Source of the DNA: Ranitomeya imitator
Lineage: Eukaryota
Direction of reading: 5' to 3'
NCBI RefSeq assembly: GCF_032444005.1
Contig: NC_091290.1
Location: forward strand, 133,610,001 to 133,674,000
DNA length: 64,000 bases
This document shows, in pieces, positions 1,674 through 51,092 of the stretch. A model generated the notes under the pieces. The model was given only the letters and a program-made list of their open reading frames with translations, did not search any database and was not told the origin of the DNA. Numbering within the stretch: position 1 is the first letter of the stretch; the number at the start of each line of letters is the position of its first letter. The position numbers were made by a program, and so were the translations under genes.

Positions 1674-1958
1674 ACTTCAAAAGGCATAGAAGAGAGCGAA
1701 TTTCTCTCATACTTATGACTATTACATGAGACAGGAATGGCTGAATGTGCCTGACAATGACATACACAAGTGCATTAAGAGGAGCTGTCACTTTCCATCT
1801 GGGTACAAAGTGTGTGTCTCTGCACGGGGTAATAATGCGCACAAGGAGAAAGCATGAAACAAATGTATATATCTGTGCTCAGATCTAATGGGACCTCTGC
1901 GAACTGACCTGGGACATATACACAACAGCAGTACCACTAATATTGAGAGTAACCACAG

Positions 1959-1964
1959 TTTATT
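1959..1964 (-). terminator. Poly(A) signal AATAAA of urah
   Basis: TTTATT on the + strand about 90 nt downstream of the urah stop codon. Confidence 0.6.
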
Positions 1965-2053
1965 TGACTGATTTTATGACTTGTATTTCAGAAATGCAGG
2001 ATACAGGATGAGAGATGCAAAGTGACAATGGCGGAAGCTGCAGATTTGCCTGA

Positions 2054-2143
2054 TTAACTCCCTCTGTAGGTGGTGTATGAGAACGGAGTCAGAAGGAGTG
2101 GCACGTGGTACTTCTGTTTTGGGTCCAAGATGGTGAAAACAAC
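2054..2143 (-). CDS. urah: urah exon 4 ([29 protein letters not shown])
   Basis: Acceptor ttttacag, phase 0, stop TAA at 2056-2054, YRGS signature. Confidence 0.96.
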
Positions 2144-5100
2144 CTGTAAAATAAGATGGAAATGTACACATCACAAAGGCATTGTATGTTCTCCATTACT
2201 GTCTTTAGTGATATACAGTTGTGCTCAAAAGTTTACATACCCCGGCAGAATTTTTGCTTTCTTTGCCTTTTTTCAGAGAATATGAATATCACCAAAACTT
2301 TTTCTCCACTCATGGTTAGTGGTTGGGTGAAGCCATTTATTGTCAAACTACTGTGTTTTCTCTTTTTAAATCAAAATGACAAACCAAAACATCCAAATGA
2401 CCCTGATCAAAAGTTCACATACCCTGGTGATTTTGGCCTGATAACATGCACAGACGTTGACACAAATGGGTTTGAATGGCTACTAAAGGTGACATCCTCA
2501 CCTGTGACCTGTTTGCTTGTAATCAGTGTGTGTGCATAAAAGCTGAGTGATTTTCTGGGATCCAGACAGACTCTTGCATCTTTCATCCAGCCACTGATGT
2601 TTCTGGATTGTGAGTCATGGGGAGATCAAATGAATTGTCAACGCATCTAAAGGAAAAGGTAGTTGAAATGTATAAAACAGGAAAGGGATACACAAAAATA
2701 TCCAAGGAATTGATAATGTCAGGCAGCAGCGTTCAAACTGTGATTAACAAATGAAAAATCAGGGTCTCTGTAAAAACAAAACTACGGTCAGGTAGACCAT
2801 CAAAAATGTCATCCACAACTGCCAGGAAAATTGTTCGGGATGCAAAGAAAAACCTACAAATAACATCAGCTGAAATACAGGACTCTGAAAACTAGCGGTA
2901 TGGCTGTTTCAAGGTGCACAATAAGGAGGCACTTGAAGAAAAATGGGCAGCATGGTTGAGTCGCCAGAAGATAGCAATTACTGCGTAAATGCCACAAAGT
3001 ATCTCGCCTACAATATGCAAAACAGCACAGAGACAAGCCTCAAAACTTCTGGAACAAGATGATTTGAAGTGATGAGACCAAAATTGAAATTTTTGGCCAC
3101 AACCATAAACGTTACATTTGGAGAAAGTTCAATAAGGCTTATGATGAAAGGAACACCATTCCTACTGTAAAGCATGGAGGTGGATTGCAGATGTTTTGGG
3201 GATGTGTGAGCTACAAAGGCACAGGAAACTAGGTCAAGGTTGAAGGAAAGATGAATTCAGCACTGTGTCAGCAAATACTGGAGGCAAATTTGCACTCATC
3301 AGCCCAGAAGCTGCGCATTGGTCATACTTGGACGTTCCAATATGACAACGATCCAAATCACAAGGCCAAGTCGACCTGTCATTGGCTACAGCAGAACACA
3401 GTGAAGGTTCTGGAGTGGCCATCTCAGTCTCCTGACCTCAATATCATTGAGCCACTCTGGAGAGATCTCAAGCGCGCAGTTCATGTCAGACAGCCCAGGA
3501 ATTTACAAGAACTGGAGGCGTTTTGCCAAGAAGAGTGGGCAGCTTTACCATCTGAGAAAATAAAGAACCTCATCCACAGCTACCACAAAAGACTTCAAGC
3601 TGTCATTGATGTTACAGGGGGTAATACACGGCATTAAGAAATAGGATATGTGAACTTTTGATCAGGGTCAATTGGATGTTTTGGGTTGTCATTATGATTT
3701 AAAAAGAGAAACCACAGTAGTTTGACAACAAATGGCTTCTTCCAACCACTAACCATGAGTGGAGAAAAAGTTTTGGTGAAAACATTCACACTCTCTGAAT
3801 AAAGGCCAAGAAAGCAAAAATTCTGCCGGGGTATGTACACTTTTGAGCTCAAATGTATAAGACCGGGTACTGATGAGTGAACAAGCCGCAATGCCCAGAC
3901 TGACCCAGACTTACAGCCTCGTATGTGACTATCAGGCTGTAAGACCCATGGTCACACTGGGCATTGTGGTCCTATCTGGGCTCTTAAATGTGCCCATCTG
4001 AACCCAGGCTAAGGGGGCCACCAGATGTGATAGAAGGGTCTTGAAAACTATCAATAGCACATAGGACCTGAAGGGCCCATGATACCCTCTGCCACATAGA
4101 AGACAGTAATATTATACGTTGCACATGCAGTGGGATAATTTGAAGCTCATGCCCCCAATGAAAACTTTCCAGCAATTATATAGGTCTTCTAATATGGGCC
4201 AAAACGACTTTCTGGGCCCCCCAAGGTTAAATGTTCCGGGGGTGACAACAGCCCATGTACCTATGGGCATATGATTTTGCTGATTTTGCATACGGTACCT
4301 CCACATAAGGGTAGAAACTGTCTTGCTGCAACTGTTTCCAGTAGTCCTTGGTGTCAAAACGTAACTGGAAAGTCCCAGCGGCAAGAGGTTCTCCTCGCAG
4401 GAGCCCTGGACAGCGGCCGTCCTCATTAGTGATGCTGGAGAAGAAAGATTAGGTTTACATTAACAAAAAATTATATTAAATACAACTTTTTCCATTTGCT
4501 CAAAGAAGAAAAAAAAAATCGTACCTGGATGTGATTTATATTGTGATAGTTACAAAAACATGGCTGCTTCCTTCCTACAACAGCGCTACAGCTGGTCACA
4601 GGTTGTGTTGGGTATTGCAGCTCTGTTCACTTTAAGAGAGCCGAGTTGTAATACCGATCACAACCCAAGGACAGGGGTGGCGCTCTCGCCGGGTGAAATC
4701 ATCCTTGTTTTTAAAATCCTGTTTTTTTTTATCCATATCATAATTTGCATTAAAATAAAAAAAATAGAATTTGTGGAATTTTCAGATCGTCCACTTGGGC
4801 TTTTTTTTGACTCCTCTATTGTTTCAAGAGACACCACATGTACATTAGCCACAGTAAACAAACAGCTATGTTTTGTATTGTAGCATCTAATGAGCGTGTG
4901 CAAAGGCCATTGTGAAGGGAGGGGAGCTGGGACATAGCCTATTGCGATTGCAATTCTTCCTCTGATGATAATGAGACTGCTGAAAACTCTTCCTGAAAGG
5001 ACTGGAAACCCGGGAGACAGTTGAGTACTCACCTTCTGCTCACTTGTACCCATTTTGTTTGGCGGGCATCCAGCTTGGACAGGGTGATGGTGAGCCCTTT

Positions 5101-5710
5101 GGCAGGAATCCCCTGCGCTGTGTTGAGGACATGTGTGCTCAGCAGGCTGTCACTGCCCCCCGACATGTCCTAAAAGATATGAAGATTTCTCGTTATTTCC
5201 TATTTATTAATACATTTGCGTGAGAATTCAGTGCGGAAAAAAAATGTGCAATCTGCTATGACTTTTTCAGCTTTGCAGTAGGGGAATTTCCTTTCCTGCA
5301 TTTTCCCCAGTTGCTAGTAAATAAGATTATATTAGGGAATCCCCTTTTAAGCAATTCCCTGAAATACAGTTGTAGGTTCGGAACCGGTTGTCCTGTCCCC
5401 TTAGTTTCTTTCTCACACCCATAGAGAGCAGCATGGCTTACAAGTCTTTTAGGGAGTTGCAATGTTAGCAATTCTTGTGCAGAACGTGCGTCGCTGCCTC
5501 TGCAGCCTGCCCTCCTCATATACCTACTTGTGCTGCAGATATTCAGCAGAAGAACTTCCTGCCGCCGGATGCCACCGACCTGCAGAAACGTGAGAGCACA
5601 TAGGAGGGTGTGATCCCATCATGCCCACAGAAGTGTCAGCACATGCGGCAGATCGTTACCTGCGTGCCCTGGAGGTGCTGCTGAATGAGCTGCAATCGCT
5701 TCCTGCTCAT
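2054..5710 (-). CDS. urah: 5-hydroxyisourate hydrolase (HIUase, transthyretin-like), 4 coding exons, 137 aa
   Basis: Exons 5710-5660, 5169-5033, 4434-4299 and 2143-2054, all GT-AG and in frame. Protein: [137 protein letters not shown]. Contains the HIUase signatures STHVLN, DGRC, YHVP and C-terminal YRGS. Confidence 0.97.
2216..3855 (+). mobile_element. Tc1/mariner DNA transposon, IR/DR type, degenerate transposase, in urah intron 3
   Basis: TA on both flanks (2214-2215, 3856-3857). TIRs of about 200 bp, each with two CAAAAGTT(T/C)ACATAC direct repeats. Transposase from ATG 2617 to 3637 with stops and frameshifts; motifs W(stop)[22 protein letters not shown]. Confidence 0.95.
4299..4434 (-). 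CDS. urah: urah exon 3 ([10 protein letters not shown]...FYPYVE)
   Basis: Acceptor ttctccag, donor gtaccg, 136 bp, contains the catalytic Arg in DGRC. Confidence 0.96.
5033..5169 (-). CDS. urah: urah exon 2 ([20 protein letters not shown]...)
   Basis: Acceptor cttttag, donor gtgagt, 137 bp, starts in phase 0, carries the catalytic His and a second in-frame Met. Confidence 0.96.
5660..5710 (-). CDS. urah: urah exon 1, peroxisomal PTS2 leader ([17 protein letters not shown])
   Basis: RLQLIQQHL fits the PTS2 consensus R-L-x5-H-L found in vertebrate HIUase leaders; donor gtaacg, phase 0. Confidence 0.9.
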
Positions 5711-6430
5711 AGTAAAGGATCCAGTGTTCTGAGCCGGGACCTTTGTACTGTAAAGCTCCTGTGCCCCAGGGGGGTCCTGGTTATCATTTACCAGCCTTGT
5801 TGTCCTGACGGATCACTGACCCCAAAGGCAATGAGTATTCTAGTATTCAGTGCCAGAAAAACATGGCTGATTCTTCCAATAACAGCGGCGCCGCTGCACC
5901 TGGTTGTGTGTGATTACCTATGAGTTTGGGATTATTCCGTCTGTACCTTATATAAGCTAATGGACCCCAAGCAAAAATGTGCTGTCAAATAAAATCCGAT
6001 CACACCGACCTTGTAGGATTTATTTTCTGCCATTGATGCAGACAGTAGATCTCCAGTTCTGGTAAACCTTTGTTCTTTGGCTGTAGTTTGATTAAAATAA
6101 TAATAAAAAGTCCTTTAGTCACCCTCCTCAGGTCCAACCCTGAGTCTCCGCTTCTGCTCAGGGTGTATGTTATGGTCGGTTTTAGCCCAAATAGCCAGAA
6201 CAAGACGCTCAGAGCTGATTGCCCAAAGCGCTATCGACATTACATCAGCGCTGTAGACAATACCAGACACCGGGAGCAGCAGTGGAGATCTGGGGAGGGC
6301 GAATAAAGCACAGTTCTATACTAATTGCTCCCAGAAACCAAAAACCTCCTTTAGCGTCGCCCCCCTCCCCCCCAAAAAAAAAATAAAAAAAAATCAGCAA
6401 ACCGTGGAGTCAATTTCAGGGATGACTTAC

Positions 6431-6538
6431 CTGGTCTCCTTCAGCCGGCAGCACAGAGATGGCAACACTACAAGTGGTACGGAGTCCGACCCCTTCCATA
6501 TCTGCAGCACTGACTGTTAGAACATAGTTATTGATTTT
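6431..6538 (-). CDS. Cadherin-like exon 8 ([36 protein letters not shown])
   Basis: Acceptor (T)9CAG, donor CAG|gtaagt. Aligns to the end of CDH1 EC2 (YTLVVQAADLQGEGLSTT) but lacks DxNDNPP. Confidence 0.88.
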
Positions 6539-9500
6539 CTGAAAAAAAAAACAAACATAAATCATTCATCACAACTGAGAACATTGGTACAAAAATACCG
6601 CAACCGAGCCCATGGAGAGGATGACCTCAGGGGTCCATGCCCACCTCCTAGCCCACGTCTCCATGCAGATCAAATGGTGTGTGACTTGTCCGCACCTTGC
6701 TGTATTCTCACTATTTCTGTTGCACAACACTTGCATTGTGATCCATGATGGCAAAAAATTGGATGTAACTTGCAACCAAAAAGTCAACAGTCGTGTTAGC
6801 TGTCAGGTCGTGTGTGGCACCAACCCCACTGGAAACTATTAGATGTAACATCACAATTGGACATCACAATCCTCTGGGACTTAAATCAATAAAATACAAG
6901 TTCAGCTGAATCTCTATATATAAACCTCTATAAGGAATTAACATGTATTTTGGCAGTAGCGTAACTAGGGCCCAATGGGCCCCAGTGCAAAATTTGTACC
7001 TGGGCCCCCACCTATATGTTGGTCAGATGTATAGGCCTTTGTAGTGTTCTAGATCCAATAAACACTTACAGTATGAGTTCACCCTCCATATAATAATGTC
7101 CCCCATCCTGTCACCTTCCTCTAATAATGTCCCTTATCTTAGACCCTTTCTGTAATGATGTTCCCCATCCTGGCCCCTTCCTGTACTAATGTCTCCCATC
7201 ATGTACAGATTCCTGTTATAATGTCCTCTGTCTTGGGCCCCTTTCTGTAATAATTCCCCACCCTATCCCCTTTCTGTAATAATGTTTCCCTTCCTGACCT
7301 CCATCCTGTAAAAATGTCCTCTGTCCTGGCCCCCATTCTGTAATAATGTCCTCCGTCCTGGCCCCCAGCCTCTAATAATGTCCCTCATCATGTGTCTCTT
7401 CCTGTTATAATGTCCTCCTTCCTGGCCACTATCCTGTAATAATGTTCCCCATCATGTGTCTCTTCCTGTATTAATGCCCCCCATCCTGGCCACTATCTGT
7501 AATAATGTCCTCCATCCTGGTCCCCAGCCTGTAATGTACCTTATCATGTGCCTCTTCCTGTTATAATGTCCCTTGTCCTGGTCCCCTTCCTGTAATAATG
7601 CCCCCCGTCTTGGCCACTATCTGTAATAATGTCCTCCTTCCTGGCCCCCATCCTGTAATAATGTCCCTCATCATGTGTCTCTTCCTGTTATAATGTCCTC
7701 CTTCCTGGCCCACATCCTGTAATAATGTTCCCCATCATGTGTCTCTTCCTGTATTAATGCCCCCCATCCTGGCCACTATCTGTAATAATGTCCTCCATCC
7801 TGGCCACTATCTGTAATAATGTCCTCCATCCTGGCCACTATCTGTAATAATGTCCTCCATCCTGGCCCCCATCCTGTAATAATATTCCCCATCATGTGTT
7901 CCTTTATGTAATAATGCCCCTGGCCACTATCTGTAATAGTGTCCTCTGTCCTGGCCCCCATCCTGTAATAATGTTCCCCATTTGTTGCTCCTTCCTGTTA
8001 TAATGTCCCTTATCCTGGGCTTCTTCCTGTTATAATTTCCCCCACTTTGGGCCCCATTCTGATACAATATCCCCCTTCCTGGTATAATGCACCCATTCTC
8101 AGTCCCTAGCAGTAACAATGTCCCCCGTCCTGGGCCCCTTCCTGGTATAATGACTCTGGTATAGATATAAATATTTAGGTTCAGCTCAACTTTGTTTTGT
8201 TAAGTTTATGGCAAAATCAATGGATCAAATTAATTTAGGAAGATGAAGAACAAACCTTGTAGCTTAGTCCGAGCTTGACCACGCTGATCAGCCCAGTTTT
8301 AGGATCAATACGAAATATATCGTTGGGCTCTTTTGGTGTCTGGTCAGTTATTGAATATTGTATTATCCCATTTGAGGTGAACTCAGTATCGTCCTCATCA
8401 GTCGCCAATACCTTCACCACGGACGTACCTATATCAGAGACACAATCAGAGTCCATACATAGAGCGTGCACCTTCTGCTCCACAGGGAAAACCTATATAA
8501 CACAATCACCGCAGTCACGCACATCATAATGCACAATTCCACCTGTTTTTGGAGGAGGAAATTGGCCATCTTAACTCTTGGACCCCCTGTGTGACCGTAC
8601 AGGTTGCACCAATGATATATCCGACCCTGGTCTAAAGAGATATGTAAGAATGCATCATGTGTATTGAATAGTCTCATGGCTGAGATGTACTGTTTATAAG
8701 CAAAGCCCTAAAAATGGACCTGGGAACAGCCAAAGGTGAGCAAGACAGTTTAATGTCACACATCATGACATGGCAAGACTGAGCAACACAACAACACACA
8801 AGGTAGTTACACTGCATCAGCAAGGTGTCTTCCTGCTCACAAAGCAGACTGGGGTTACAGGATGGGCTGTTTAAGTTCTGTTGAAGAAGCACCAAGAAAC
8901 AGGCAACGTTGAGGACAGTAGATGATGCGGTCGGCCAAGGAAACTTATTGCAGCAGGTGAAAGAAGCTTCATGATTACTTGCGTTCTAAATCAGAAGATG
9001 TCCAGCAGTGCCATCAGTTCAGAACTGACAGCGACCAGTGGGACACCGCTACATCCATCTACTGTTTGGAGTAGTCTGCCCAGAAGTGACCGTCATGGAA
9101 GACGTGGCCAAAAAGAACAGATTTTCCATATGGGAACATGGACAAGCAACTCAACTATGCATGAAAATATAGGAGTTCATTAACTATTTTCAAGTGACAA
9201 GTATCGAAATGACAACACCAAATATTGATTTTTCCTTTGCTGATTCACTTTGCATTTTGTCAATTGCTAAAAATAAACAAAAACTTCTAGTTTTGAACTC
9301 ATTCATTTTTTCCACACCTGCCTGAAACTTTTGCACAATACGATACGTCTCAAGAATGGCTTAAAATTTTAAGGAATAGTGATTTGAAAAAAAATCTAGA
9401 AAAATGGAAATAACCCTTTATAAGGCGTGTGATTTAATGGTATATCTAACACAAAACATGACACTTACCGGGTAAAGCATCCTCCTTTACTCCTCCATCA

Positions 9501-12500
9501 TATCGTGCCTGTGTGAACACCGGCTTGTTGTCATTCTGGTCTGAAATATTAATGACGATTTCAACAGGATCTTCCAAAGTTTGTCCCGACTCTGAAATAG
9601 CAGATACTTTAATCTGTAATCATAAATGTTTATATGAATTACGGTAATATCGTGTCGTCATTTGAAATAACGATAAAGATTCTTGCACAGAAATCAGTGT
9701 AAAATGTAAAGTGGAGACGTGGTTTGGGATGAAATGTTCTGCCCTCCTGCACAGCCCCTCATTTTATGTCCCCCTTGCACAGCCCACAATCCCCTCATTT
9801 TATGCCCTCCAGCAACCTCTCACAGTCCCTCAGTTCATGGTCAAGTAATATAGGAATTAAAGAAAAAAAAAAACCCTTATATTCGCCTAATCCAGGCTCC
9901 TTGTCCACTGTCTCCTCTCCTGTCCTGAATAGCAGTGGGCGCTTGATGGCATGATGACATCACTGAACGGCACCATCCAATGTCCTGTGTGTGCGCCTTC
10001 TCCAACAGGGTGCAGGCTGGAAATGGCCTACATCTTGCTGGAGGTCTTGGCAGAGCAGAAGGCTGACTACAGCTCCTCTGCCGGGGAGTGATTTCTGGAG
10101 CACAGACTGAGAGAGCATGTGCCTGCGCACCGACCATAACTGTGCTGAATGCCTGCGGCTGGAGGAAGGCGTCGGGTGGCCGAAGGCATTCTTTTTTTTT
10201 TTTTTTTCAAAGGGCGCCCTCCTCAGGTAGGCAAGAGGTAGCACCCTAGTCAAGTGCCTAACTTGTCTACCCCTTGTCTCGGCCCTGCCAAACTTACATA
10301 GTGTTTTTTTATTACTTAAGAGTCAAAAGNNNNNNNNNNNNNNNNNNNNNNNNNNNNNNNNNNNNNNNNNNNNNNNNNNNNNNNNNNNNNNNNNNNNNNN
10401 NNNNNNNNNNNNNNNNNNNNNNNNNNNNNNNNNNNNNNNNNNNNNNNNNNNNNNNNNTATAATTTGTGTCGCCATTTTCCTGTATTTTTATTTTATGCAT
10501 ATTTTTTCATTGATGGAGCGGTGTGATAACGCCATCATAGTCAATAGAATTGCCACCCCCTCCAAACTGTGGCAATTAAGAGCTTGTCGTGGGCACAGCT
10601 GTAAGGGGGTACAGAAGTACACCCTATCTGGTGGAAGCAGGATGAAAAATGGCACTTCGGATTTTTGCATTGAAGCCTGGTAACTCTAAGGCTACGTTCA
10701 CACTAGCGTTGTGTGCCGCTGCGTCGGCGACGCAACGCACAACGCACGCAAAAACGCGGCAAAACGCACGCAAAAACGCTGCGTTTTGCAACGCATGCGT
10801 CGTTTTTTGCCGAAAATCGGACGCAATAAAAATGCAACTTGTTGCGTTTTCTTGGTCCGACGCTTGCGGCAAAAAAGACGCATGCGTCGCACAACGCAAC
10901 AAACAAAAACGCATGCGTCCCCCATGTTAAATATAGGGGCGCATGACGCGTGCGTCGCCGCTGCGTCGCCCGACGTTAACCCGACGCACACTAGCATAAC
11001 GCTAGTGTGAACGTAGCCTTAGCTACACCTTTCGTGCCCCCTAATAATAATACAGCAGGGACTACAGAGAGGCCGTGTACTTACATTGTACTTAGCAATG
11101 TATTCCCTGTCCAGGGGTTTGGTCACCCACAGCCAACCAGTACTGTCCACAGTAAATACCCCAATGGGATCTGAATCAGCCCCGGTGCCGGATATTCTGT
11201 AAAAGACTTTCCCAGTAGAGTCCACATTTGATTTCACCTATAGAGAAGGCAAAATAAAAGTACGTGAAAAATCAATGGTTATAGGAGGTAGAAGTTGTAT
11301 TTGACTATATCTAATCATAGTTATTCATCTCCCATTGGACATTTTGTCTATTAGCAAAATGTATAAACTTTCAGCTCTCTGCAATAAATGTTCATATCTC
11401 AACACAACTAATATTACTCTCAGAATTATTCACCCCGTGTTCTGGGGCTGCTTTGCTGCATCTGGCACAAGGTGTCTACAATCTGTGCAGGGTACAATGA
11501 AATCTCAAGACTATCAAGGGATTCTAGGGAGAAATGTGCTGCCCAGTGTCAGAAAGCTTGGTCTCAGTCTCAGGTCATGGGTCTTGCAACAGGATAATGA
11601 CCCAAAACACACAGCTAAAAACACCCAAGAATGGCTAAGAGGAAACATTGGACTATTCTGAAGTGGCCATCATAGAGCCCTGACCTAAATCCTATTGAGC
11701 ATCTTTGGAAAGAGCTGAAACATGGCGTCTGGAAAAGGCAACCTTCAAACACGAGACAACTGGAGCAGTTTGCTCTTGAGGAGTGGCCAAAATACCTGTC
11801 GAGAGGAGCAGAAGTCTCATTGACTGTTACAGGAACCGTTTGATTTCAGTGATTGCTCAAAAGGTTGTGTGACAAAATGTTAAGTTAAGGTACCATCATT
11901 TCTGTCCAGGCCTATTTCATGAGTTTCAACACTTGTGCCATTAGTTGTGCATATTTTTTACCCATTTTTGATGGATGTACATAGGCTGGAATAGCAGAGT
12001 CTATCTACCGATCTTATAGATGCCGTACCTGGAAAAATCGCTTTGGATACGGACCCCGCTCATTCTCAGTTATGTAGACTGGCGGTAAAACATAAGCTCT
12101 TTTCTTTCTTCTCAGGAGAAGACTTGTTTTCTCAATATCCTTATTTCCATCAGAAGACTGGGCCTGTGAACCACAAATATAGTTGATAAAGTCAAGTGGT
12201 TCTTACGATACTTTCAGCTACTTACATTTAAGTGAAGGGACGGAGCATATTTTCCGAGACATCGTTCAGTTTCCACATAAGGGCACCGCTGTACAGATTG
12301 GATGAAGCCAATTTCCCCCCAAATTTGTTTTATTTTCCATAGGAGGGCTCCTCACCTTTGTCAGATACATTGTTAGGACTTCTTCAGGTTAAAGTGTATC
12401 TCCCCTTTAAATCGTGAAGTCTTGTGAATTAGGATCTGTCACATTCACGCACTAGTGTATCCCATCACAGACTCAGTTTTTCGGATTGTCTCCGATGGCG

Positions 12501-15500
12501 TTTACTCCTGTTTTGGTCAAAAACTATACAGACCAGAACCAGCAATGAGACCAGCCATCTCAGGACCGAGTATGGAGCGCCAGGCAAGGGTTTATTTGGC
12601 TTTACTCAGTTAAAGAGAGTCGAGTTGTGAGTCAAATTCAGAGTCAAGTGCTGGCGGAGTTCAGTCAGAGGAAGTGCTAGACAGTGACAGCATTTGACAA
12701 GCAGCGGCAAAGTCGTCCTGTCCATGCCAAGTCTCCCAACAGTATGACGACAAATGTGAGGCTTCGTGCAGATCCCCGGGCAGTCATGGGCCTAGGTCCC
12801 GGAAAAGGCATTGAGTGCCATGTCTCTGTCTCCCCTGTGAGAAAGATGTCGGCCGGGTCTCAGCGAGGGAAGGATGGTGGGCCTCAGGGAAGCCAGATAG
12901 GAGGTCCCTGGTACCAACAGGAGCTGTTTAGGTTGGGGGGAGGTCGGGCAGAACAGAGTCAAGGACTGATAGTACACTGGACAAAGGGAACATCATCCAG
13001 AGGGGATTCTGCCGCACTCTGTGCGCCGCAACCGCAAGTATCTGAATTGCACAGTTAAATTGAATTGGTTTAACTAGACCTAAGGTCTCCTGTCATGTCT
13101 GCAGATGTATCTGGTCCCATGGATGAGGAGGTAATAGGGACTCCCGAACAACAAGTGAGTAAAGAAAGCACATCACGCTCAACTCTGATTCCTGCTTAGA
13201 AGAGGGATATCAGAGTAAAGAGAACTCTGTTCTGGCTCATCGCAACCGACCCTGTGCGCCCTTCATAGGGATACATCACTCTCCCCCACACGCTGGAAGC
13301 AGTAGTGCCCTCTCTGGCATGACACGCTCACACATCAGCCTCCTCTCGTGTGGCCAATCTTGCGCATGGTCGCTATATTCTTACCCCTTACAGGTTCCCC
13401 CTCAACTAATGGCGGCACTCTTGTTCAGGTGGGCTGATCTCCTTCACCAGGGTAACACTTCACACACTACTGCTCCGACTTAAGCGCTTTCTTGCTCCTG
13501 TGCAGCCATATCTACACCATATTATTATAAGCAGTAAAAAAAAAGCCAGTTCTGTTATGTTAATATATTGCTAACCATAAATAATAGGTTTACTCGACCG
13601 CACATGAATCAGACACTGCTTGCGTGACTGCAGCCAGCTGTGACTGTCAGGTCTCTTACTACACATATACAGTTGTGTGAAAAAGTCTCTGCCCCCTTCC
13701 TGATTTCCTATTCTTTTGCAATGTTTGACATACTTAAGTGTTTCAGATCAACAAACAAATATAAATATTAGACAAAGATAACATAACAAAATGCAGTTTT
13801 TATAAGAAGGTCTTTATTATTAAGCAAGAAAGAAATCCAAACCTACAGGGTCCTGTATGATTCCAGTTTCTCTCATACACAGCCATGTAGCCTGTGGATC
13901 GTTGTTAATAGTTGCTGCCTTCCATGCCACAGGTACTAGGTTTGAATCCCGGCAAAGGGGAAGCTCTAAGAAAAAGTAGATCTAGGCCACCTGGGTGCCA
14001 AAGTCTCAGAAGGGCCCCCCATGTCATCTGTACCGACCAGTAACACTCATTCCCCTACAACAGATTGTAGGCGCACAGTAATTTTATGAACATGTGAGAG
14101 GGCACATGCCAAGCATGATATGAGGTCTATGCACAAATGTCTGATTTATGGATTTAGGGAAAATATGTTTTTTTGGTGATGTTTTTTTTACGGAAAAAAT
14201 AAATAGAAATAAAACACTCTGCCATATAAAACAATTCATTTATTCATACAAATGGTAGAAGATCAGAAAAAGTAAGTAACCGCCAGGTAGACAAGTTAGA
14301 ACCTTCCAAAAGACTGATCCACCGCCTGATAGTTTAGAAGAAACAAAGACAAAAAAACAATTTAATGCTTAGCCATAAATGTGAAAAAAACAAACAAACA
14401 AACAAACAAAAACTTCCAAGACATCCAAGGCTGTTAGTTTAGTGATCACCGCTGGGATTAGACCATTATAACCCGTTTCTCCTCCTACTGCCTGCATTTA
14501 CCACCAGGGGGAGCTCACTGTATATAGATGTAAATAGCTACGACTGACATAATAACTGTCTTCACTCAGCTCCCTCTAGTGGTGACAGTAGGAATCCACA
14601 ACTACTGTATTTTTCGGACCATAAGACGCACCCCAAATTTTGGGGTGAAAAATAGCAGAAAAAAAGATTTTTATAAGATGGGGGTCATCTTATTGTCCGA
14701 ATTTAAGGTATCTTACCTGAGAGACGGCGGTGGTATAGCAGGGTCACAGAAGGCAGGATCCCTTCCTCAGGAAGCCAGCAGCGGCAGAAGTGGGGCAATG
14801 CTGCAGTCCCGGGGTGCGATGCTGTGGGTCCGGTGTCGGTGGTGAGGCAGAACTGAAGCAGGGACCCACCCTCAGGATGCCGGCAGCAGAAATCTGGCGG
14901 CGCAGCGGCCCGGTGTCCACGGTGAGAAGAGTGCATCACCGGTTTCTCTGCAGCCATCTTCCTGAAGCCGTGGGCCGCCGGAGGCTTCAGGAAAATGGCC
15001 GCCGGAAGCCACGCGTGCGCAGATTAAGATCTCAGCGGCCATTTTCCTGAAGCCTCCGTCGGCCCACGGCTTCGGGAAGATGGTCGCAGGGAAACTGGTG
15101 ATGCACTCTGCTCACCGTGGACACCGGGCCGCAGCGCCACCACATTTCTGCCGCTGGCATCCTGAAGAAAGGACCCTGCTCACCTGCACTCCACACCGCC
15201 CACCACCGCAGCATCGCCACACCTCTGCTACAACCCCCGGTAAGCCTGCGTCCGCACTATAAGATGCACCCCCCAATTTCCTCCCAAATTTTTTTGGGGA
15301 AAAAAGTGCATCTTATAGTCTGAAAAATACGGTATATAATTATTTTTTTCTACTTTACTCCTGTATAAAACCTTACAATTATATTTATACTATACAGCAA
15401 CCATCATGGAATTTGGAACCTAGTATGAGATGGTGGGTAAAACTTTACAGCTTTACAATACCTGCTGTTCTCTTTCATTCCATAAGATAATGGGCACAGA

Positions 15501-16877
15501 GTGTCGCGTTCCTTTGGCATCCCATGCATTCAATACAAAACTGACAGCTCCGTCGTGGAGGGTGATCTGCCTCTTCACCGCAACTTTACCATCGGGAAAC
15601 ACCCTGAAGCGGGTGTCTTCAGGCGAGTACAGCGCCCGGTTATTAACGGAGCAGGATGTAAAGGTCACTAAAAACGATAAAAACATTTTATTAACACAAG
15701 GCTGAAATAATTGAATATGTTTTCATAATGTACAGTCTACGTCACAACCATGAAGCACCATTTGTGCCTCTGTATAATGAGAAGACCCCCTTCTGTGCCT
15801 CCTATTATGAATACATCCCCCTTTGTGCTTGGCTCCAAGCGATAATGCCCCATATAATAATTCCAACCCCTTTTGCGCCTCTATATGGTAATATCGCCCT
15901 CTTTTCGCCCCTATATAATAATTATGGTCCTTTTGTGTCAATTTAAAAAAAAATGCAAATCCGTTAAGTGGTCCGCAAGTCTCAGCATTTTCTCTCCGTC
16001 TTTGGAGAACTCTGGAATGTGGGCGATTTCCTTCTGAGGTTTCTATGGAATTTATTAGTGGGATGCCAGGATTTACGTTACTTATGGGGGCACAGTATAT
16101 CCTTCCAATAAAGTGATGGAGCGTGGTACAGATGGGCAAAACGATTTTCCATTTCTAGTTCTGCCCTCTATGTCTTTACTTGTGCCCAGGAGGACGGCTG
16201 CAGCTTCATCTTGGTGCCCAAAACATGCCGGGCCAAGGATACCGGCCACGGAACGGAGGTCCGGCTGCAACGTCTGACCGGATGTGTGAATGTGGTCTTA
16301 TGTATAGGGTCCTGGGAGTTTCCAGCACTAGAAATAGCTTATTTAATAGACGGCGGAGTTTTCTAGACCACCCAATGGGATACATTACCGTTATCCTACT
16401 ATGGCTGATAACAGAGAACAACAGACTGAACGTAAAGCATTTTACTGGGACTTTAATAAAGGGGCCAGCACTTAGGACCGCCACAAAGCCCTCACTTTGT
16501 GCTATGGGAGCACCCTAAAAACTGGTACCTTTTCCAACAGCTCGGCCTCTCTCCAGGATCTTACGGGGCACAGTAAAAGCGTAGCGTTGCTCACTGAAGC
16601 CGGGCACACATTGTTCCAGGTCCTCCAAGACCACCAGGGACACCTGCAAAATAAATTAAAACACCGTTTGATATGCAACTTTGACAGTTGCACTGGCTTT
16701 GCATGCATGCTGCAACTTGTAGTCCCACCCCGGCTAGATGACAGGCGATGCTTTCATACTGTCCCAACTACAGATATCGGTTGTATGCCTAATATAAATC
16801 CGTAAGCCCCTCTTCTACCCACATAATGTATTTACCTTTACTAGGAGGATTAGTAACGCCGGGTACATCAACCTCAT
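6431..16877 (-). CDS. Truncated type I classical cadherin (CDH1/CDH3/EP-cadherin-like): signal peptide, prodomain, EC1, EC2; at least 359 aa; 3' end unresolved
   Basis: Exons 16877-16836 (42 bp), 16643-16529 (115), 15667-15462 (206), 12163-12029 (135), 11237-11085 (153), 9613-9469 (145), 8428-8256 (173) and 6538-6431 (108). All GT-AG, summing to 1077 bp without a stop, with phases matching CDH1 exons 1-8. Motifs: C-x-PGF, LERGR, RRKKR furin site, LDRE, DQNDNKP, ATDEDD. Confidence 0.92.
7085..8152. repeat. Degenerate minisatellite, about 30-33 bp unit (CCTGTAATAATGTCCTCCATCCTGGCCCC-like), in cadherin intron 7
   Basis: Tandem variants seen directly, with higher-order alternation of unit types. 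Confidence 0.9.
8256..8428 (-). CDS. Cadherin-like exon 7 ([14 protein letters not shown]...[15 protein letters not shown])
   Basis: Phase 1 in, phase 0 out; homologous to CDH1 exon 7 (EC2). Confidence 0.93.
8640..9340 (+). mobile_element. Internally deleted Tc1-like fragment
   Basis: Remnant GRPRKL-type paired-domain coding sequence near 8930-9100 and a Tc1-like terminal region near 9230-9340. Confidence 0.45.
9469..9613 (-). CDS. Cadherin-like exon 6 ([33 protein letters not shown]...)
   Basis: 145 bp, same size as CDH1 exon 6; DQNDNKP present; HAV position reads SAI. Confidence 0.95.
10330..10457. other. Assembly gap (N run)
   Basis: Run of N bases. Confidence 1.
10690..11018. mobile_element. 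Palindromic MITE (GGCTACGTTCACACTAGCG...CGCTAGTGTGAACGTAGCC)
   Basis: Perfect terminal inverted repeats of about 20 bp flanked by TAA/TTA, with an internally palindromic GACGCA-rich body. Superfamily (Kolobok/T2 or Harbinger) not resolved. Confidence 0.85.
11085..11237 (-). CDS. Cadherin-like exon 5 ([21 protein letters not shown]...[11 protein letters not shown])
   Basis: 153 bp, phase 0/0; EC1 core with GAD and LDRE motifs. Confidence 0.96.
11430..11930 (+). mobile_element. Tc1 transposase 3' fragment
   Basis: FWGCFAASG...QQDNDPKHT...[11 protein letters not shown], frameshifted and 5'-truncated. Confidence 0.9.
12029..12163 (-). CDS. Cadherin-like exon 4 (…LRRKKR|[23 protein letters not shown])
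   Basis: 135 bp, phase 0/0. Furin site followed by a mature N-terminus AYVLPP instead of DWVIPP. Confidence 0.95.
13669..13860. mobile_element. Tc1 terminal fragment
   Basis: TA|CAGTTGTGTGAAAAAG start typical of Tc1 TIRs; no partner end found. Confidence 0.55.
14605..15332. mobile_element. Non-autonomous TA-flanked DNA transposon (pogo/Tc2-like MITE) with an internal hairpin of about 150 bp arms
   Basis: TIRs CTGTATTTTTCGGACCATAAGACGCAC / GTGCATCTTATAGTCTGAAAAATACGG; TA flanks; inverted duplication at about 14850-15190. Confidence 0.85.
15462..15667 (-). CDS. Cadherin-like exon 3 (prodomain)
   Basis: [38 protein letters not shown]...FVLNAWD matches the type I cadherin prodomain. Confidence 0.95.
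16529..16643 (-). CDS. Cadherin-like exon 2 ([38 protein letters not shown])
   Basis: 115 bp, same size as CDH1 exon 2; CxPGF and LERGR motifs. Confidence 0.95.
16836..16877 (-). CDS. Cadherin-like first coding exon, signal peptide ([14 protein letters not shown])
   Basis: Hydrophobic leader, donor AAG|gtaaat in phase 0. A possible upstream acceptor at 17043-17044 would make 16878-17042 a 5' UTR. Confidence 0.8.
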
Positions 16878-17469
16878 TGTTCCACAGTTTGCCAGAGTTC
16901 TTGTTTACTGCAGCTTTTGGGTAAAGTGAGAAAGTCCAGTGAGTCTATCCCTCCTCCTCCTCACACTGGACGTAGTCACCATCGCCTCCAGCGGAGTAAG
17001 CATTTCCAGATGTGTAGAAAAGCAGAGATACCCATGTAGAGCCTGAAAAAGACAAGTACAGTTGTGGCCAAAAATATTGACACCCCTGCAATTCTGTCAA
17101 TAATACTCAGTTTCTTCCTGAAAATGATTGCAAACACAAATTCTTTGTTATTATTATCTTCATTTAATTTGTCTTAAATGAAAAAACACAAAAGAGAATG
17201 AAGCAAAAAGCAAAACATTGATTATTTCACACAAAACTCCAAAAATGGGCCAGACAAAAGTATTGGCACCCTCAGCCTAATACTTGGTTGCACAACCTTT
17301 AGCCAAAATAACTGCGACCAACCGCTTCCAGTAACCATCAACGAGTTTATTACAATGCTCTGCTGGAATTTTAGACCATTCTTCTTTGGCAAACTGCTCC
17401 AGGTCCCTGATATTTGAAGGTGCCTTCTCCAAACTGCCATTTTTAGATCTCTCCACAGGTGATCTATGG

Positions 17470-18787
<1,318 letters not shown>

Positions 18788-18809
18788 GTACTGGAGGCCC
18801 AAAGTACTA

Positions 18810-21800
18810 ATGCTTCTCAATAGAGGGAAAAGAGAAGTTCTGAGACCATTTTTTTTTCTTTGCACTGTGTTCTGTCTTTCTTTCCCCCTATACATCAGGG
18901 TGGTTCAGAAAACAGGTGTGGACATGGACATTCAGGGTCTGTCCTCTTTGATGGATAATCTCACTATAACAGTACAGAACATTCAAGATTTAGTGGTTCA
19001 GAATCCTATGTTAGAACCTAAAATTCCTATTCCTGAGTTATTTTTTGGAGATAGAGCTAAGTTTTTGAATTTTAAAAATAATTGTAAACTATTTCTGGCT
19101 TTGAAACCCCGCTCCTCTGGTGACCCAGTACAACAAGTTAAGATGATTATTTCTTTATTACGTGGCGACCCTCAAGACTGGGCATTTTCCCTTGCGCCAG
19201 GAGATCCTGCATTATGTAATATTGATGCGTTCTTTCTGGCGCTCGGATTGCTGTACGACGAACCTAATTCAGTGGATCAGGCAGAGAAAAATTTGCTGGC
19301 TCTGTGTCAGGGTCAGGATGAGATAGAGATTTATTGTCAGAAGTTTAGAAAGTGGTCCGTGCTCACTCAATGGAATGAATGTGCGCTGGCAGCTATTTTC
19401 AGAAAGGGTCTCTCTGAAGCCCTTAAGGATGTCATGGTGGGATTTCCTATGCCTGCTGGTCTGAATGAGTCTATGTCTTTGGCCATTCAGATCGGTCGAC
19501 GCTTGCGCGAGCATAAATCTGTGCACCATTTGGCGGTATTATCTGAGCATAAACCTGAGCCTATGCAGTGCGATAGGACTTTAACCAGAGCTGAAAGGCA
19601 AGAACACAGACGTCAGAATGGGCTGTGTTTCTACTGTGGTGATTCCACTCATGCTATCTCCGATTGTCCTAAGCGCACTAAGCGGTTCGCTAGGTCTGCC
19701 ACCATTGGTACGGTACAGTCGAAATTTCTTTTGTCCGATACTTTGATCTGCTCTTTGTCTTCCTATTCTGTCATGGCATTTGTGGATTCAGGCGCTGCCC
19801 TGAATTTGATGGACTTGGAGTTTGCTAGGCGCTGTGGGTTTGTCTTGGAGCCCTTGCAGTGTCCTATTCCATTGAGAGGAATTGATGCTACGCCTTTGGC
19901 CAAGAATAAGCCTCAGTATTGGACCCAGCTGACCATGTGCATGGCTCCTGCGCACCAGGAGGATATTCGCTTTCTGGTGTTGCATAATCTGCATGATGTG
20001 GTCGTGTTGGGGTTGCCATGGCTACAAGTCCATAACCCAGTATTAGATTGGAAATCAATGTCTGTGTCCAGCTGGGGTTGTCAGGGGGTACATGGTGATG
20101 TTCCATTTCTGTCTATCTCATCATCCACCCCTTCTGAGGTCCCAGAGTTCTTGTCTGATTACCGGGATGTATTCGATGGGCCCAAGTCCAATGCCCTACC
20201 TCCGCATAGGGATTGTGATTGTGCTATCGATTTGATTCCTGGTAGTAAGTTTCCTAAGGGTCGACTGTTTAATTTATCTGTACCTGAGCACGCCGCTATG
20301 CGGAGTTACGTGAAGGAGTCTTTGGAGAAGGGTCATATTCGCCCGTCATCGTCGCCATTGGGAGCGGGGTTCTTTTTTGTGGCCAAGAAGGATGGTTCGC
20401 TGAGACCTTGTATTGATTACTGCCTTCTAAATAAAATTACGGTCAAATTTCAGTACCCCTTGCCGCTGCTGTCTGATTTGTTTGCTCGGATTAAGGGGGC
20501 CAGTTGGTTCACCAAGATAGATCTTCGTGGTGCGTATAATCTTGTGCGTATTAAACGGGGCGATGAATGGAAAACAGCATTTAATACGCCCGAAGGCCAT
20601 TTTGAGTACCTGGTTATGCCATTCGGACTTTCTAATGCTCCATCAGTGTTTCAGTCCTTTATGCATGACATCTTCCAAGAGTACCTGGATAAATTCCTGA
20701 TTGTGTACTTGGATGATATTTTGGTCTTCTCGGATGATTGGGAGTCTCATGTGAAGCAGGTCAGAATGGTGTTCCAGGTCCTGCGTGCTAATTCTTTGTT
20801 TGTGAAGGGGTCAAAGTGTCTCTTTGGTGTTCAGAAGATTTCATTTTTGGGGTTCATTTTTTCTCCTTCTACTATCGAGATGGACCCTGTTAAAGTTCAG
20901 GCCATTTATGATTGGACTCAGCCTACATCTCTGAAGAGTCTGCAGAAGTTCCTGGGCTTTGCTAATTTTTATCGTCGATTCATCGCTAATTTTTCTAACA
21001 TTGCTAAACCGTTGACTGATTTGACCAAGAAGGGTGCTGATGTGGTCAATTGGTCTTCTGCTGCTGTGGAAGCTTTTCAGGAGTTGAAGCGTCGTTTTTC
21101 TTCTGCCCCTGTGTTGTGCCAACCAGATGTTTCGCTTCCGTTTCAGGTCGAGGTTGATGCTTCCGAAATTGGAGCAGGGGCTGTTTTGTCGCAGAGAAGT
21201 TCTGATTGCTCGGTGATGAAACCATGCGCCTTCTTTTCCAGGAAATTTTCGCCTGCTGAGCGAAATTATGATGTTGGCAATCGAGAGTTTCTAGCCATGA
21301 AGTGGACATTCGAGGAGTGGCGTCATTGGCTTGAAGGAGCTAAGCATCGCGTGGTGGTCTTGACTGATCATAAGAACTTGACTTATCTCGAGTCTGCCAA
21401 ACGGTTGAATCCTAGACAGGCTCGTTGGTCGCTGTTTTTCTCCCGTTTTGACTTTGTGGTTTCGTACCTTCCGGGCTCTAAAAATGTGAAGGCGGATGCC
21501 CTGTCTAGGAGTTTTGTGCCCGATTCTCTGGGTTTGTCTGAGCCGGCAGGTATTCTCAAAGAGGGGGTAATTTTGTCTGCCATCTCCCCTGATTTGCAGC
21601 GGGTGCTGCAAAAATTTCAGGCTAACAGACCTGACCGTTGCCCAGCGGAGAAACTGTTTGTCCCGGATAGGTGGACGAATAAGGTTATCTCTGAGGTTCA
21701 TTGTTCGGTGTTGGCTGGTCATCCTGGAATCTTTGGTACCAGAGATTTGGTGGCTAGATCCTTTTGGTGGCCGTCTCTGTCGCGGGATGTGCGTTCTTTT

Positions 21801-26707: not shown

Positions 26708-51092
<24,385 letters not shown>

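What the first reader, a model, noticed from the sequence alone, without database searches (positions are those of the whole stretch)
6431..16877. Intact two-domain classical cadherin with coordinated loss of the EC2-EC3 calcium site
Seen: eight exons, 1077 bp, no stop or frameshift, all splice sites canonical. The EC1-EC2 calcium ligands are kept (TENE, LDRE, DQNDN, ATDEDD). Both EC2 motifs that serve the next linker are gone: LDRE reads LSYK, and DxNDNPP reads PAEGDQ with the exon shortened to 108 bp. Known: type I cadherins have five EC domains, TM and a catenin-binding tail, and these motifs are nearly invariant. Inference: selective decay of exactly the residues made redundant by losing EC3, with the rest conserved, argues for a functional, long-standing secreted mini-cadherin rather than a broken duplicate. 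It could act as an adhesion decoy or as a component of secretions, egg jelly or sperm surface.
Basis: partly seen in the sequence, partly recalled or inferred. Interest (0 to 1): 0.88.

Follow-up and report, generated by a model that had tools for sequence, protein, structure and literature searches.

The report
Cadherin front end spliced onto HIUase
The eight "mini-cadherin" exons are real, but they are not a gene of their own: RNA shows them spliced in frame onto the neighbouring uric-acid-pathway enzyme gene (urah, HIUase), giving a predicted secreted cadherin-enzyme chimera that is annotated in many land vertebrates and coelacanth and that I found described in no paper.

Summary
Observation confirmed. 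Eight minus-strand exons (16877-6431, 1077 nt, all GT-AG) encode a signal peptide, prodomain, furin site, EC1 and EC2. The EC1-EC2 calcium motifs are kept. The EC2-EC3 motifs are gone (LSYK, PAEGDQ).

Interpretation only partly right. There is no stop because the frame runs on. Exon 8 ends in phase 0 and is spliced to an acceptor 3 nt before the ATG of the downstream urah gene. The 11-exon CDS translates exactly to RefSeq XP_069595133.1, "EP-cadherin-like", Ranitomeya imitator, 479 aa (Cadherin_pro + Cadherin + Transthyretin/HIUase).

RNA contigs from three runs in two studies carry the 6431|5169 junction at high depth. No EC3-EC5, TM or tail exons follow.

The canonical urah first exon (PTS2 peroxisomal signal, 5710-5660) sits intact inside "intron 8". 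It is absent from the fusion-expressing runs, but other RNA runs hold its sequence. This points to two promoters, one giving a secreted chimera and one a peroxisomal enzyme.

Cadherin+HIUase models occur in frogs, salamanders, coelacanth, reptiles, birds, echidna and carnivores. Loss of the EC2-EC3 site recurs wherever EC3 is missing.

The N gap (10330-10457) lies in intron 5, and no exon is missing there.

The scan had already noted the fusion idea on this same DNA (s1-307359). Secretion, tetramer formation and activity are inferred, not shown.

The parts
16836..16877 (-). coding exon 1: ATG and most of the signal peptide
   Evidence: One search gives the exact match to P0081. The only hydrophobic segment of the protein is residues 1-27. 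AF2 models a helix at 5-18.
16529..16643 (-). exon 2: end of the signal peptide and start of the cadherin prodomain
   Evidence: Pfam Cadherin_pro covers residues 25-110.
15462..15667 (-). exon 3: cadherin prodomain
   Evidence: Matches the Xenopus EP-cadherin prodomain at E=2e-12. This exon was the query of the representative search that found the orthologues.
12029..12163 (-). exon 4: furin site RRKKR and the mature N-terminus AYVLPP...TENE (Trp2 replaced by Tyr)
11085..11237 (-). exon 5: EC1 core with LDRE
   Evidence: LDRE is invariant in 30 orthologues.
10330..10457 (.). assembly gap (N) inside intron 5; not coding
   Evidence: One search gives the position. The exon 5/6 join is in frame and aligns without a gap to mRNA-derived and other orthologues.
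9469..9613 (-). exon 6: end of EC1 (SAI in place of HAV), the DQNDN linker and the start of EC2
8256..8428 (-). exon 7: EC2 with ATDEDD, ending in LSYK where LDRE would be
   Evidence: The loose end of the RNA contigs at 6540 reads the end of this exon.
6431..6538 (-). exon 8: last strands of EC2, PAEGDQ in place of DxNDNPP, phase 0-0, donor gtaagt
   Evidence: RNA joins 6431 to 5169.
5660..5710 (-). canonical urah first exon (17 codons with the PTS2 nonapeptide RLQLIQQHL, donor gtaacg), skipped by the fusion transcript
   Evidence: tblastn with 137-141-aa frog HIUases and the sequence itself. Depth is zero in runs X1, X2, X5 and X7. RNA runs X9-X12 hold 0.25-0.69 of the words of 5650-5830, and unclassified runs X18-X22 hold 0.63-0.69.
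5033..5169 (-). exon 9 = urah exon 2: acceptor ttttag|GAC ATG, in frame with exons 8 and 7; carries the first catalytic His (THVLN)
4299..4434 (-). exon 10 = urah exon 3 (DGRC catalytic Arg)
   Evidence: RNA joins 5033 to 4434.
2054..2143 (-). exon 11 = last urah exon (HVPLLL ... YRGS, stop)
   Evidence: The loose end at 4297 in the RNA contigs reads into this exon.

Best explanation
The eight exons are the distal 5' module of a two-promoter cadherin-urah gene. A CDH1-type cadherin gene that has lost everything after EC2 sits directly upstream of urah (5-hydroxyisourate hydrolase, HIUase) on the same strand. Transcripts that start at the cadherin promoter splice exon 8 (phase 0) to the acceptor of urah exon 2 and skip urah's own first exon. 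They encode one 479-aa protein: signal peptide, cadherin prodomain, furin site, EC1, EC2, a short flexible linker and a complete HIUase domain. Shown here: the exon structure, the in-frame junction in RNA, exact identity to RefSeq XP_069595133.1, the Pfam domains, conservation of the architecture in other vertebrates, and purifying selection on the cadherin part. Inferred: the protein enters the secretory pathway, because its only hydrophobic segment is N-terminal and it has no TM. It is cleaved after RRKKR. EC1-EC2 is stiffened by its retained calcium site. The EC2-EC3 ligands decayed because there is no EC3 to pair with. The HIUase domain, which keeps every catalytic residue, forms its usual tetramer, so the product would be a secreted tetramer carrying four EC1-EC2 arms. 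The proximal promoter with the PTS2 exon at 5710-5660 would give the ordinary 137-aa peroxisomal HIUase from the same three 3' exons in other tissues. The confidence given is for the gene and transcript structure; for the inferred protein behaviour (secreted, processed, tetrameric, active) I would say about 0.45.
For: (1) Gene structure. The 11-exon, all GT-AG CDS of 1440 nt translates exactly to P0081, which is XP_069595133.1 of Ranitomeya imitator. (2) RNA. Contigs of 1355, 1480 and 624 nt in runs X1, X2 and X5 (two studies) carry the joint 6431|5169 (skips 1261 nt, GT..AG) and the joint 5033|4434, at word depths 446, 389 and 125. They run on into exon 7. No depth is seen in the bins covering 5210-6364. 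(3) Domains. Pfam gives Transthyretin/HIUase 129 bits, Cadherin 116 bits and Cadherin_pro 81 bits. AF2 gives four folded beta domains, with low-confidence linkers at 120-145 (furin region) and 357-366 (junction). (4) No TM: the Kyte-Doolittle score exceeds 1.6 only in residues 1-27. (5) Conservation. Proteins with PF00028+PF00576 occur in dendrobatids, Bufo, Rana, Rhinoderma, newt, axolotl, Latimeria, squamates, turtles, many birds, echidna, canids and meerkat. Four independent ranid mRNA contigs encode the whole fusion. The flanking genes nup210l and gas8 are the same in other dendrobatids. (6) Selection against the ranid mRNA: pN/pS is 0.27 (prodomain), 0.49 (EC1), 0.50 (EC2), 0.74 (exon 8) and 0.28 (HIUase), with pS 0.6-0.8. 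The EC1-EC2 calcium ligands and the HIUase catalytic residues are invariant or nearly so in 30 orthologues. (7) Lithobates pipiens has Ile at the junction Met, so there the HIUase domain of this gene can only be made as a fusion. (8) The PTS2 exon is intact, and a different set of RNA runs, some from the same study, holds its sequence.
Against: No protein-level evidence exists for the chimera. Secretion, furin cleavage, tetramer formation and enzyme activity are all inferred. The RNA evidence is assembled contigs, not raw reads. The runs were chosen because they hold the cadherin exons, so they cannot show what share of all urah mRNA is the fusion. Their tissues are hidden. An HIUase in the secretory pathway is separated from peroxisomal urate oxidase, so its substrate supply is unclear. 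The cadherin part looks loosely constrained in frogs. Trp2 is replaced in Ranitomeya (Tyr), a ranid (Leu), Pelobates (Arg) and Rhinoderma (Ile). EC1 is only 66-71% identical between R. imitator and Dendrobates or Phyllobates, while the prodomain and HIUase are 94-96%. Some frog models lack exons: Anomaloglossus lacks exon 8, Pelobates lacks exons 6-7, and Gastrophryne has the prodomain only.
Confidence: 0.82

Rival explanations
1. The chimeric transcript is real but functionless. It would be read-through or conjoined-gene splicing from a decaying cadherin relic into urah, tolerated rather than selected. The only functional product of the locus would be the PTS2-HIUase from the proximal promoter.
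For: EC1 evolves fast within dendrobatids, and the adhesive Trp2 and HAV are lost. Exon content varies among frog gene models. Xenopus, Dendropsophus and Pelobates fuscus models stop after the prodomain. The PTS2 exon is intact and other RNA runs hold its sequence. A secreted HIUase has no obvious substrate source.
Against: All eight exons keep an open frame and canonical splice sites, here and in distant lineages. Synonymous sites against a ranid are saturated while pN is 0.22-0.36. The EC1-EC2 calcium ligands, the furin site and the fold core are conserved in 30 orthologues. The fusion contig has word depth of 125-446 in the runs that hold it, and in those runs it was the only assembled form carrying urah exons. 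Lithobates pipiens has lost the internal Met.
Confidence: 0.12
2. One reading: a stand-alone secreted two-domain cadherin, ending just after exon 8 (read-through would add VSHP and a stop), acting as an adhesion decoy or a secretion component.
For: If intron 8 were retained, the frame would close four codons after exon 8. One Anomaloglossus model (P0001) ends in retained sequence after urah exon 2 rather than in the full HIUase.
Against: No RNA depth was seen between exon 8 and urah exon 2 (bins 5210-6364) in four runs. The contigs that carry exon 8 continue into urah exons. RefSeq models for R. imitator, R. variabilis, Dendrobates and Phyllobates are all fusions of 479-480 aa.
Confidence: 0.04
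3. An ordinary five-domain cadherin whose exons 9-16 lie beyond the window edge, with urah nested in a large intron.
For: The window ends about 2 kb after urah, so the sequence beyond was not seen here.
Against: Exon 8 splices to urah in RNA. In Phyllobates and Anomaloglossus the next gene after the fusion is gas8 on the opposite strand. The EC2-EC3 ligands are destroyed, which is not expected if an EC3 followed.
Confidence: 0.01

Closest known systems
Classical type I cadherins CDH1 (E-cadherin) and CDH3 (P-, C- or EP-cadherin)
   Same: The exon plan of exons 1-8 matches: signal peptide, prodomain, furin site, EC1 and EC2, with the full set of EC1-EC2 calcium ligands. These are the best PDB sequence matches. 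In an EC1-EC2 tree the fused modules fall among CDH1-type sequences and not in the CDH3/B-cadherin clade.
   Different: It has two EC domains instead of five, and no TM or catenin-binding tail. Trp2 is Tyr and HAV is SAI. The EC2-EC3 calcium site is gone. The C-terminus is an enzyme. It is only about 43-44% identical to frog cdh1.
5-hydroxyisourate hydrolase (URAH/HIUase), the transthyretin-related enzyme of urate breakdown
   Same: Exons 9-11 encode a complete HIUase with the catalytic His, Arg and His and the C-terminal YRGS. The locus also keeps the canonical PTS2 first exon. The neighbour gas8 matches the position of human URAHP beside GAS8; that point is from my own memory and was not tested.
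   Different: The transcript seen here replaces the PTS2 exon with about 360 residues of secretory cadherin sequence.
Coelacanth 'HIUase B' (Forconi et al. 2014, as cited in PMC4764851)
   Same: The nr entry '5-hydroxyisourate hydrolase B [Latimeria menadoensis]' (P0103, 497 aa) has the same architecture: prodomain, EC1, EC2, HIUase.
   Different: PMC4764851 describes it as a coelacanth-specific duplicate, with liver and testis isoforms, and says tetrapods have a single gene. No cadherin part is mentioned in that paper. I could not read the 2014 paper. In coelacanth and bullfrog the fused HIUase and the PTS2 HIUase are separate genes. In this window they share exons.
Transthyretin
   Same: It is an HIUase-fold tetramer that became an extracellular protein by gaining a signal peptide (PMC4324301).
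   Different: Transthyretin lost the catalytic residues and the YRGS tail and binds thyroid hormone. Here the enzyme residues are kept, and secretion would come from a borrowed cadherin front end.
Urah-Urad fusions (allantoin synthase) of plants, diatoms and bacteria
   Same: These are natural fusions of HIUase to another domain, reviewed in PMC13751858.
   Different: There the partner is the next enzyme of the pathway. That 2026 review does not contain the word cadherin.
T-cadherin (CDH13)
   Same: It is a cadherin without a TM or cytoplasmic tail that does not rely on Trp2 strand swapping. This is from my own knowledge.
   Different: T-cadherin has five EC domains and a GPI anchor, and no enzyme domain.

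Membership tests
Classical type I cadherin | Signal peptide, cadherin prodomain and a furin site before EC1 | tested here: met
   Pfam Cadherin_pro scores 81 bits. RRKKR lies directly before the mature N-terminus. There is an N-terminal hydrophobic segment.
Classical type I cadherin | Calcium ligands at the EC1-EC2 linker (xENx Glu11, LDRE, DQNDN, DxDD) | tested here: met
   TENE, LDRE, DQNDN and ATDEDD are present. These columns are invariant or nearly so in 30 orthologues.
Classical type I cadherin | Trp2 strand-swap residue and the HAV motif | tested here: not met
   The mature N-terminus is AYVLPP (Tyr2), and SAI stands in place of HAV. R. variabilis has the same Tyr2.
Classical type I cadherin | Five EC repeats with calcium sites at every linker | tested here: not met
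   Only EC1 and EC2 are present. No further cadherin exons lie in 1-6430. LSYK and PAEGDQ replace the EC2-EC3 ligands.
Classical type I cadherin | Transmembrane helix and catenin-binding cytoplasmic tail (PF01049) | tested here: not met
   No PF01049 hit. No hydrophobic segment beyond residue 27.
HIUase / transthyretin family (PF00576) | Full-length domain match above Pfam's cut-off | tested here: met
   129.3 bits against a cut-off of 25.3. Residues 369-478 cover profile positions 1-109 of 109.
HIUase / transthyretin family (PF00576) | Catalytic His (THVLN), Arg (DGRC), His (HVPLL) and the C-terminal YRGS that separate the enzyme from transthyretin | tested here: met
   All are present. H372, D410-G411 and H463 are invariant, and R412 and R477 nearly so, in the alignment.
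HIUase / transthyretin family (PF00576) | Homotetramer and hydrolysis of 5-hydroxyisourate | not testable with these tools
   Only a monomer was modelled.
Chimeric (conjoined) gene using an upstream gene's promoter and exons | A splice junction between the two gene parts seen in RNA, in frame | tested here: met
   The joint 6431|5169 is present in three runs. Exon 8 ends in phase 0 and exon 9 starts in phase 0.
Chimeric (conjoined) gene using an upstream gene's promoter and exons | The downstream gene keeps its own first exon and promoter | tested here: inconclusive
   The PTS2 exon is intact at 5710-5660 and other RNA runs hold its sequence.

The most novel reading that the evidence does not exclude
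The cadherin-HIUase chimera is a real, selected, secreted protein family of lobe-finned vertebrates. It would be an HIUase-fold tetramer displaying calcium-stiffened EC1-EC2 arms, made from a distal cadherin promoter. The same enzyme exons would also give the peroxisomal enzyme from a proximal promoter. It persists in birds and reptiles that lack urate oxidase, and some of those copies have lost catalytic residues. It would therefore have a function beyond urate breakdown, and would be a second, independent route by which the HIUase fold left the cell, parallel to the origin of transthyretin.
Probability: 0.4. Interest if true: 0.8.

Novelty: new variant of a known kind. Interest (0 to 1): 0.6.

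Why it matters
Two textbook families are joined in one polypeptide: an adhesion module and a purine-catabolic enzyme. The architecture is annotated from coelacanth to dogs under uninformative names such as "cadherin-1-like" and "EP-cadherin-like". It appears in none of the open literature I could search, including a 2026 review of HIUase fusions.

If the protein is made, three things follow. It changes where HIUase is thought to act in amphibians. It gives a natural experiment on which cadherin features can be shed once EC3 is gone. It parallels the step by which transthyretin became extracellular.

For genome annotation, it warns that a truncated cadherin with no stop codon should be read together with its downstream neighbour.

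Tried and rejected
(1) Cadherin exons in 1-6430 or elsewhere in the window. I used motif scans and tblastn with full-length and fused cadherins. None were found beyond the eight exons.

(2) dN/dS among four ranid mRNA contigs. They differ by only a few sites, so the test has no power. It did show that one contig carries a diverged HIUase part.

(3) dN/dS within dendrobatids. The genomic DNA of Phyllobates, Anomaloglossus and R. variabilis could not be fetched because the files are too large, and the Dendrobates product is not on record. I used per-domain protein identities instead.

(4) A single ancient fused paralogue. The EC1-EC2 tree does not show the fused modules as one clade. Several sit next to their own lineage's CDH1: Elgaria is 98% identical, Emydura 91%, and Lissotriton is sister to its own copy. 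One origin with gene conversion and repeated duplication therefore remain unresolved. The anuran rows are long branches and their placement is unsafe.

(5) Contig lengths as a test of the N gap. I rejected this because the far ends of the contigs were not shown.

(6) Literature. Six searches and three papers found no description of a cadherin-HIUase protein. Forconi 2014 is not held.

(7) Reading P0004, 'cadherin-1 isoform X2' of X. laevis, as an isoform of cdh1. Rejected: it is only 31% identical to the cdh1 prodomain.

Full report
WHAT IS IN THE SEQUENCE

The feature lies on the minus strand. PDB sequence searches put them in type I cadherins. The EC2 exon matches Cadherin-3 at E=4e-14, the EC1 exon matches Cadherin-1 at E=2.7e-16, and the prodomain exon matches Xenopus EP-cadherin at E=2e-12.

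A script enumerated AG/GT boundaries and fixed eight exons: 16877-16836, 16643-16529, 15667-15462, 12163-12029, 11237-11085, 9613-9469, 8428-8256 and 6538-6431. They total 1077 nt, every site is GT-AG, and there is no stop. The motifs are as reported: RRKKR then AYVLPP...TENE, LDRE, DQNDN, ATDEDD, then LSYK and PAEGDQ.

THE ASSEMBLY GAP

The N run at 10330-10457 lies inside intron 5. Exons 5 and 6 join in frame. The join aligns without any gap to a ranid mRNA contig and to 29 other orthologues. No coding exon is missing there.

WHY THERE IS NO STOP

There are no EC3-EC5, TM or tail exons there. Instead there is an intact urah (HIUase) gene on the same strand.

Exon 8 ends on a full codon before gtaagt. 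The urah exon that holds the ATG begins at an acceptor, ttttag|GAC ATG, three bases before that ATG. A splice between the two is therefore in frame.

Adding exons 5169-5033, 4434-4299 and 2143-2054 gives a 1440-nt CDS. Its translation is identical, residue for residue, to P0081. P0081 is XP_069595133.1, 'EP-cadherin-like', Ranitomeya imitator, 479 aa. Pfam finds Cadherin_pro, Cadherin and Transthyretin/HIUase, all far above their cut-offs.

RNA EVIDENCE

Five RNA runs hold 11-20% of the sampled words of 6400-9620. I laid four runs (X1, X2, X5, X7) on 3950-7080.

- Contigs of 1355, 1480 and 624 nt in X1, X2 and X5 (two studies) carry the joint 6431|5169. It skips 1261 nt and has GT..AG ends on the coding strand.
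- The same contigs carry the joint 5033|4434. Word depths are 446, 389 and 125.
- Their loose ends read the end of exon 7 on one side and the last urah exon on the other.
- Depth is zero across the bins 5210-6364 in all four runs.

So in these samples the assembled urah-containing transcript is the cadherin fusion, and nothing suggests a transcript ending after exon 8. Three caveats apply. These are assembled contigs. The runs were picked because they hold the cadherin exons. Their tissues are hidden.

A SECOND, CANONICAL START

Many frogs have annotated HIUases of 137-141 aa whose first 17-20 residues carry a PTS2 peroxisomal signal. tblastn places that exon in the window at 5710-5660. It is intact, with its own ATG, the nonapeptide RLQLIQQHL and a gtaacg donor, and it lies inside what is intron 8 of the fusion. 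It had no depth in the four runs laid.

RNA runs X9-X12 hold 0.25-0.69 of the words of 5650-5830, and unclassified runs X18-X22 hold 0.63-0.69. X10-X12 come from the same study as X1-X4. This suggests two promoters used in different samples, but I could not lay reads again, so the splice from this exon to exon 9 is inferred. No short HIUase at 90% identity or more to this one is in the protein collection; the best hit is 89%, from Engystomops. For dendrobatids, the only annotated HIUase is therefore the fusion.

RELATIVES

A search with the prodomain exon alone returned short cadherin-like proteins, several of them ending in HIUase. A search with the Anomaloglossus fusion then listed proteins with both PF00028 and PF00576 from these groups:

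- Dendrobatids at 479-480 aa: R. variabilis, Dendrobates, Phyllobates.
- Other frogs: Rhinoderma, Bufo, Rana, Lithobates.
- Salamanders: newt and axolotl.
- Latimeria, including the nr entry '5-hydroxyisourate hydrolase B'.
- Lizards, snakes, turtles, many birds, echidna, canids and meerkat.

Four independent ranid RNA contigs encode the entire 464-aa fusion. In Phyllobates, Anomaloglossus and R. variabilis the gene sits between nup210l (divergent) and gas8. Stop-free frames that look like nup210l exons lie on the plus strand of the window from about 35 kb; I did not search them against any database.

THE CALCIUM-SITE CLAIM

In an alignment of 30 fusions, the EC1-EC2 ligands are invariant or nearly so. 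These are Glu-Asn of xENx, LDRE, DQNDN and DxDD. The HIUase catalytic residues are equally conserved.

The EC2 'LDRE' column and the terminal DxNDN vary:

- Kept with EC3 present: Zootoca, snake, duck.
- Kept although EC3 is absent: axolotl.
- Partly kept: coelacanth, turtle, galliforms.
- Lost: hyloid frogs (LSYK, LSYE), ranids (LSHQ, LAHQ), newt (LKHE), most Neoaves (LVAQ, LAAQ).

It is the expected consequence of having no EC3.

SELECTION

Against a ranid mRNA, synonymous sites are saturated (pS 0.60-0.81). pN is 0.22 in the prodomain, 0.33 in EC1, 0.36 in EC2, 0.46 in exon 8 and 0.17 in HIUase. The uncorrected pN/pS values are 0.27, 0.49, 0.50, 0.74 and 0.28. The cadherin part is constrained, though less than the enzyme, and exon 8 is the least constrained.

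Within dendrobatids, the prodomain and HIUase are 94-96% identical between R. imitator and Dendrobates or Phyllobates. EC1 is only 66-71% identical. Trp2 is replaced in several frogs. I could not obtain dendrobatid CDS to tell relaxation from positive selection.

STRUCTURE

AF2 with the 30-row alignment gave mean pLDDT 73. It models four beta domains: prodomain 28-116, EC1 150-241, EC2 254-353 and HIUase 367-467. Confidence is low at 120-145 (furin region) and 357-366 (junction). The only hydrophobic segment is residues 1-27. This fits a cleavable signal peptide, no membrane anchor, and a flexible tether between EC2 and the enzyme.

ORIGIN

An EC1-EC2 tree with canonical CDH1 and CDH3/B-cadherin sequences places the fused modules among CDH1-type sequences, outside the CDH3 clade. 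They do not form one clade. Elgaria, Emydura and newt modules sit beside their own species' full-length cadherin (98%, 91% and 60% identity). Carnivore modules fall within mammalian CDH1. Anuran modules are long basal branches.

One ancient fusion with gene conversion from a neighbouring CDH1 and repeated partial duplications both remain possible. In frogs the module is clearly a separate gene from cdh1, at 43-44% identity. In coelacanth and bullfrog the fused HIUase and the PTS2 HIUase are different genes (92/113 and 103/111 identical). In Pelobates and in this window they appear to share exons.

LITERATURE

I found no paper describing a cadherin-HIUase protein. A 2026 review of HIUase fusions does not contain the word cadherin. 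PMC4764851 cites Forconi 2014 for two coelacanth HIUase genes with liver and testis isoforms, and calls the duplication coelacanth-specific. I could not read that paper.

VERDICT

The thing itself is not a mini-cadherin gene. It is the cadherin-derived front end of a cadherin-HIUase chimera, already modelled by RefSeq, supported here by RNA junctions, and conserved widely.

The mechanism I commit to is a secreted, furin-processed EC1-EC2-HIUase that tetramerises through the enzyme domain, alongside a peroxisomal PTS2-HIUase from a proximal promoter. The gene structure and transcript are shown. Secretion, processing, oligomer state, activity and the promoter switch are inferred.

Noticed in passing
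window 18226-23562 (+): An LTR-retrotransposon-like insertion. It has a 1210-aa stop-free frame at 18786-22415, flanked by near-identical ends of about 327 nt at 18226-18552 and 23236-23562. It lies between coding exon 1 of the fusion gene and nup210l.
   Followed up: no
window 7091-8044: A tandem array with a 32-nt period, about 30 copies at 71% match, in intron 7. I kept it out of the read-laying stretch.
   Followed up: partly
window 290-1690 (-) and GC skew of 1-2000: A long tandem repeat that translates as a repeated ...PTRSPYILASV... unit. GC is 0.53 and GC skew 0.39, just downstream of the urah 3' end.
   Followed up: no
window 3251-3637 (+), 11335-11661 (+), 17277-17895 (-): Tc1/mariner-like transposase remnants in the introns and flanks of the gene.
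   Followed up: no
L001-L004 (ranid RNA contigs): L004 has the same cadherin part as L001-L003, but its HIUase part differs at dS of about 0.15. With the bullfrog short and fused HIUases differing at 8 of 111 residues, this points to two HIUase 3' modules (paralogues) in ranids, or to chimeric assembly.
   Followed up: partly
orthologues P0123, P0111, P0093, P0108: Some sauropsid fused HIUase domains have lost catalytic residues. The turtle has DGNC and YKGS, the crane YCGS, the snake YWGN and Elgaria YRGN. Their lineages are thought to lack urate oxidase, which hints at a non-enzymatic role there.
   Followed up: no
locus listing (Anomaloglossus): A second complete gene with Cadherin_pro, Cadherin and Transthyretin domains (477 aa) ends 7.7 kb upstream of the one I asked for. 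This is a tandem duplicate of the fusion gene in that frog.
   Followed up: no
window 25600-26710 and about 35000-47000 (+): Stop-free frames that look like nup210l exons lie on the plus strand; I did not search them against any database. In R. variabilis the fusion gene model starts 1.2 kb from nup210l on the other strand, which fits a shared divergent promoter and a 5' non-coding exon far upstream of 16877.
   Followed up: partly
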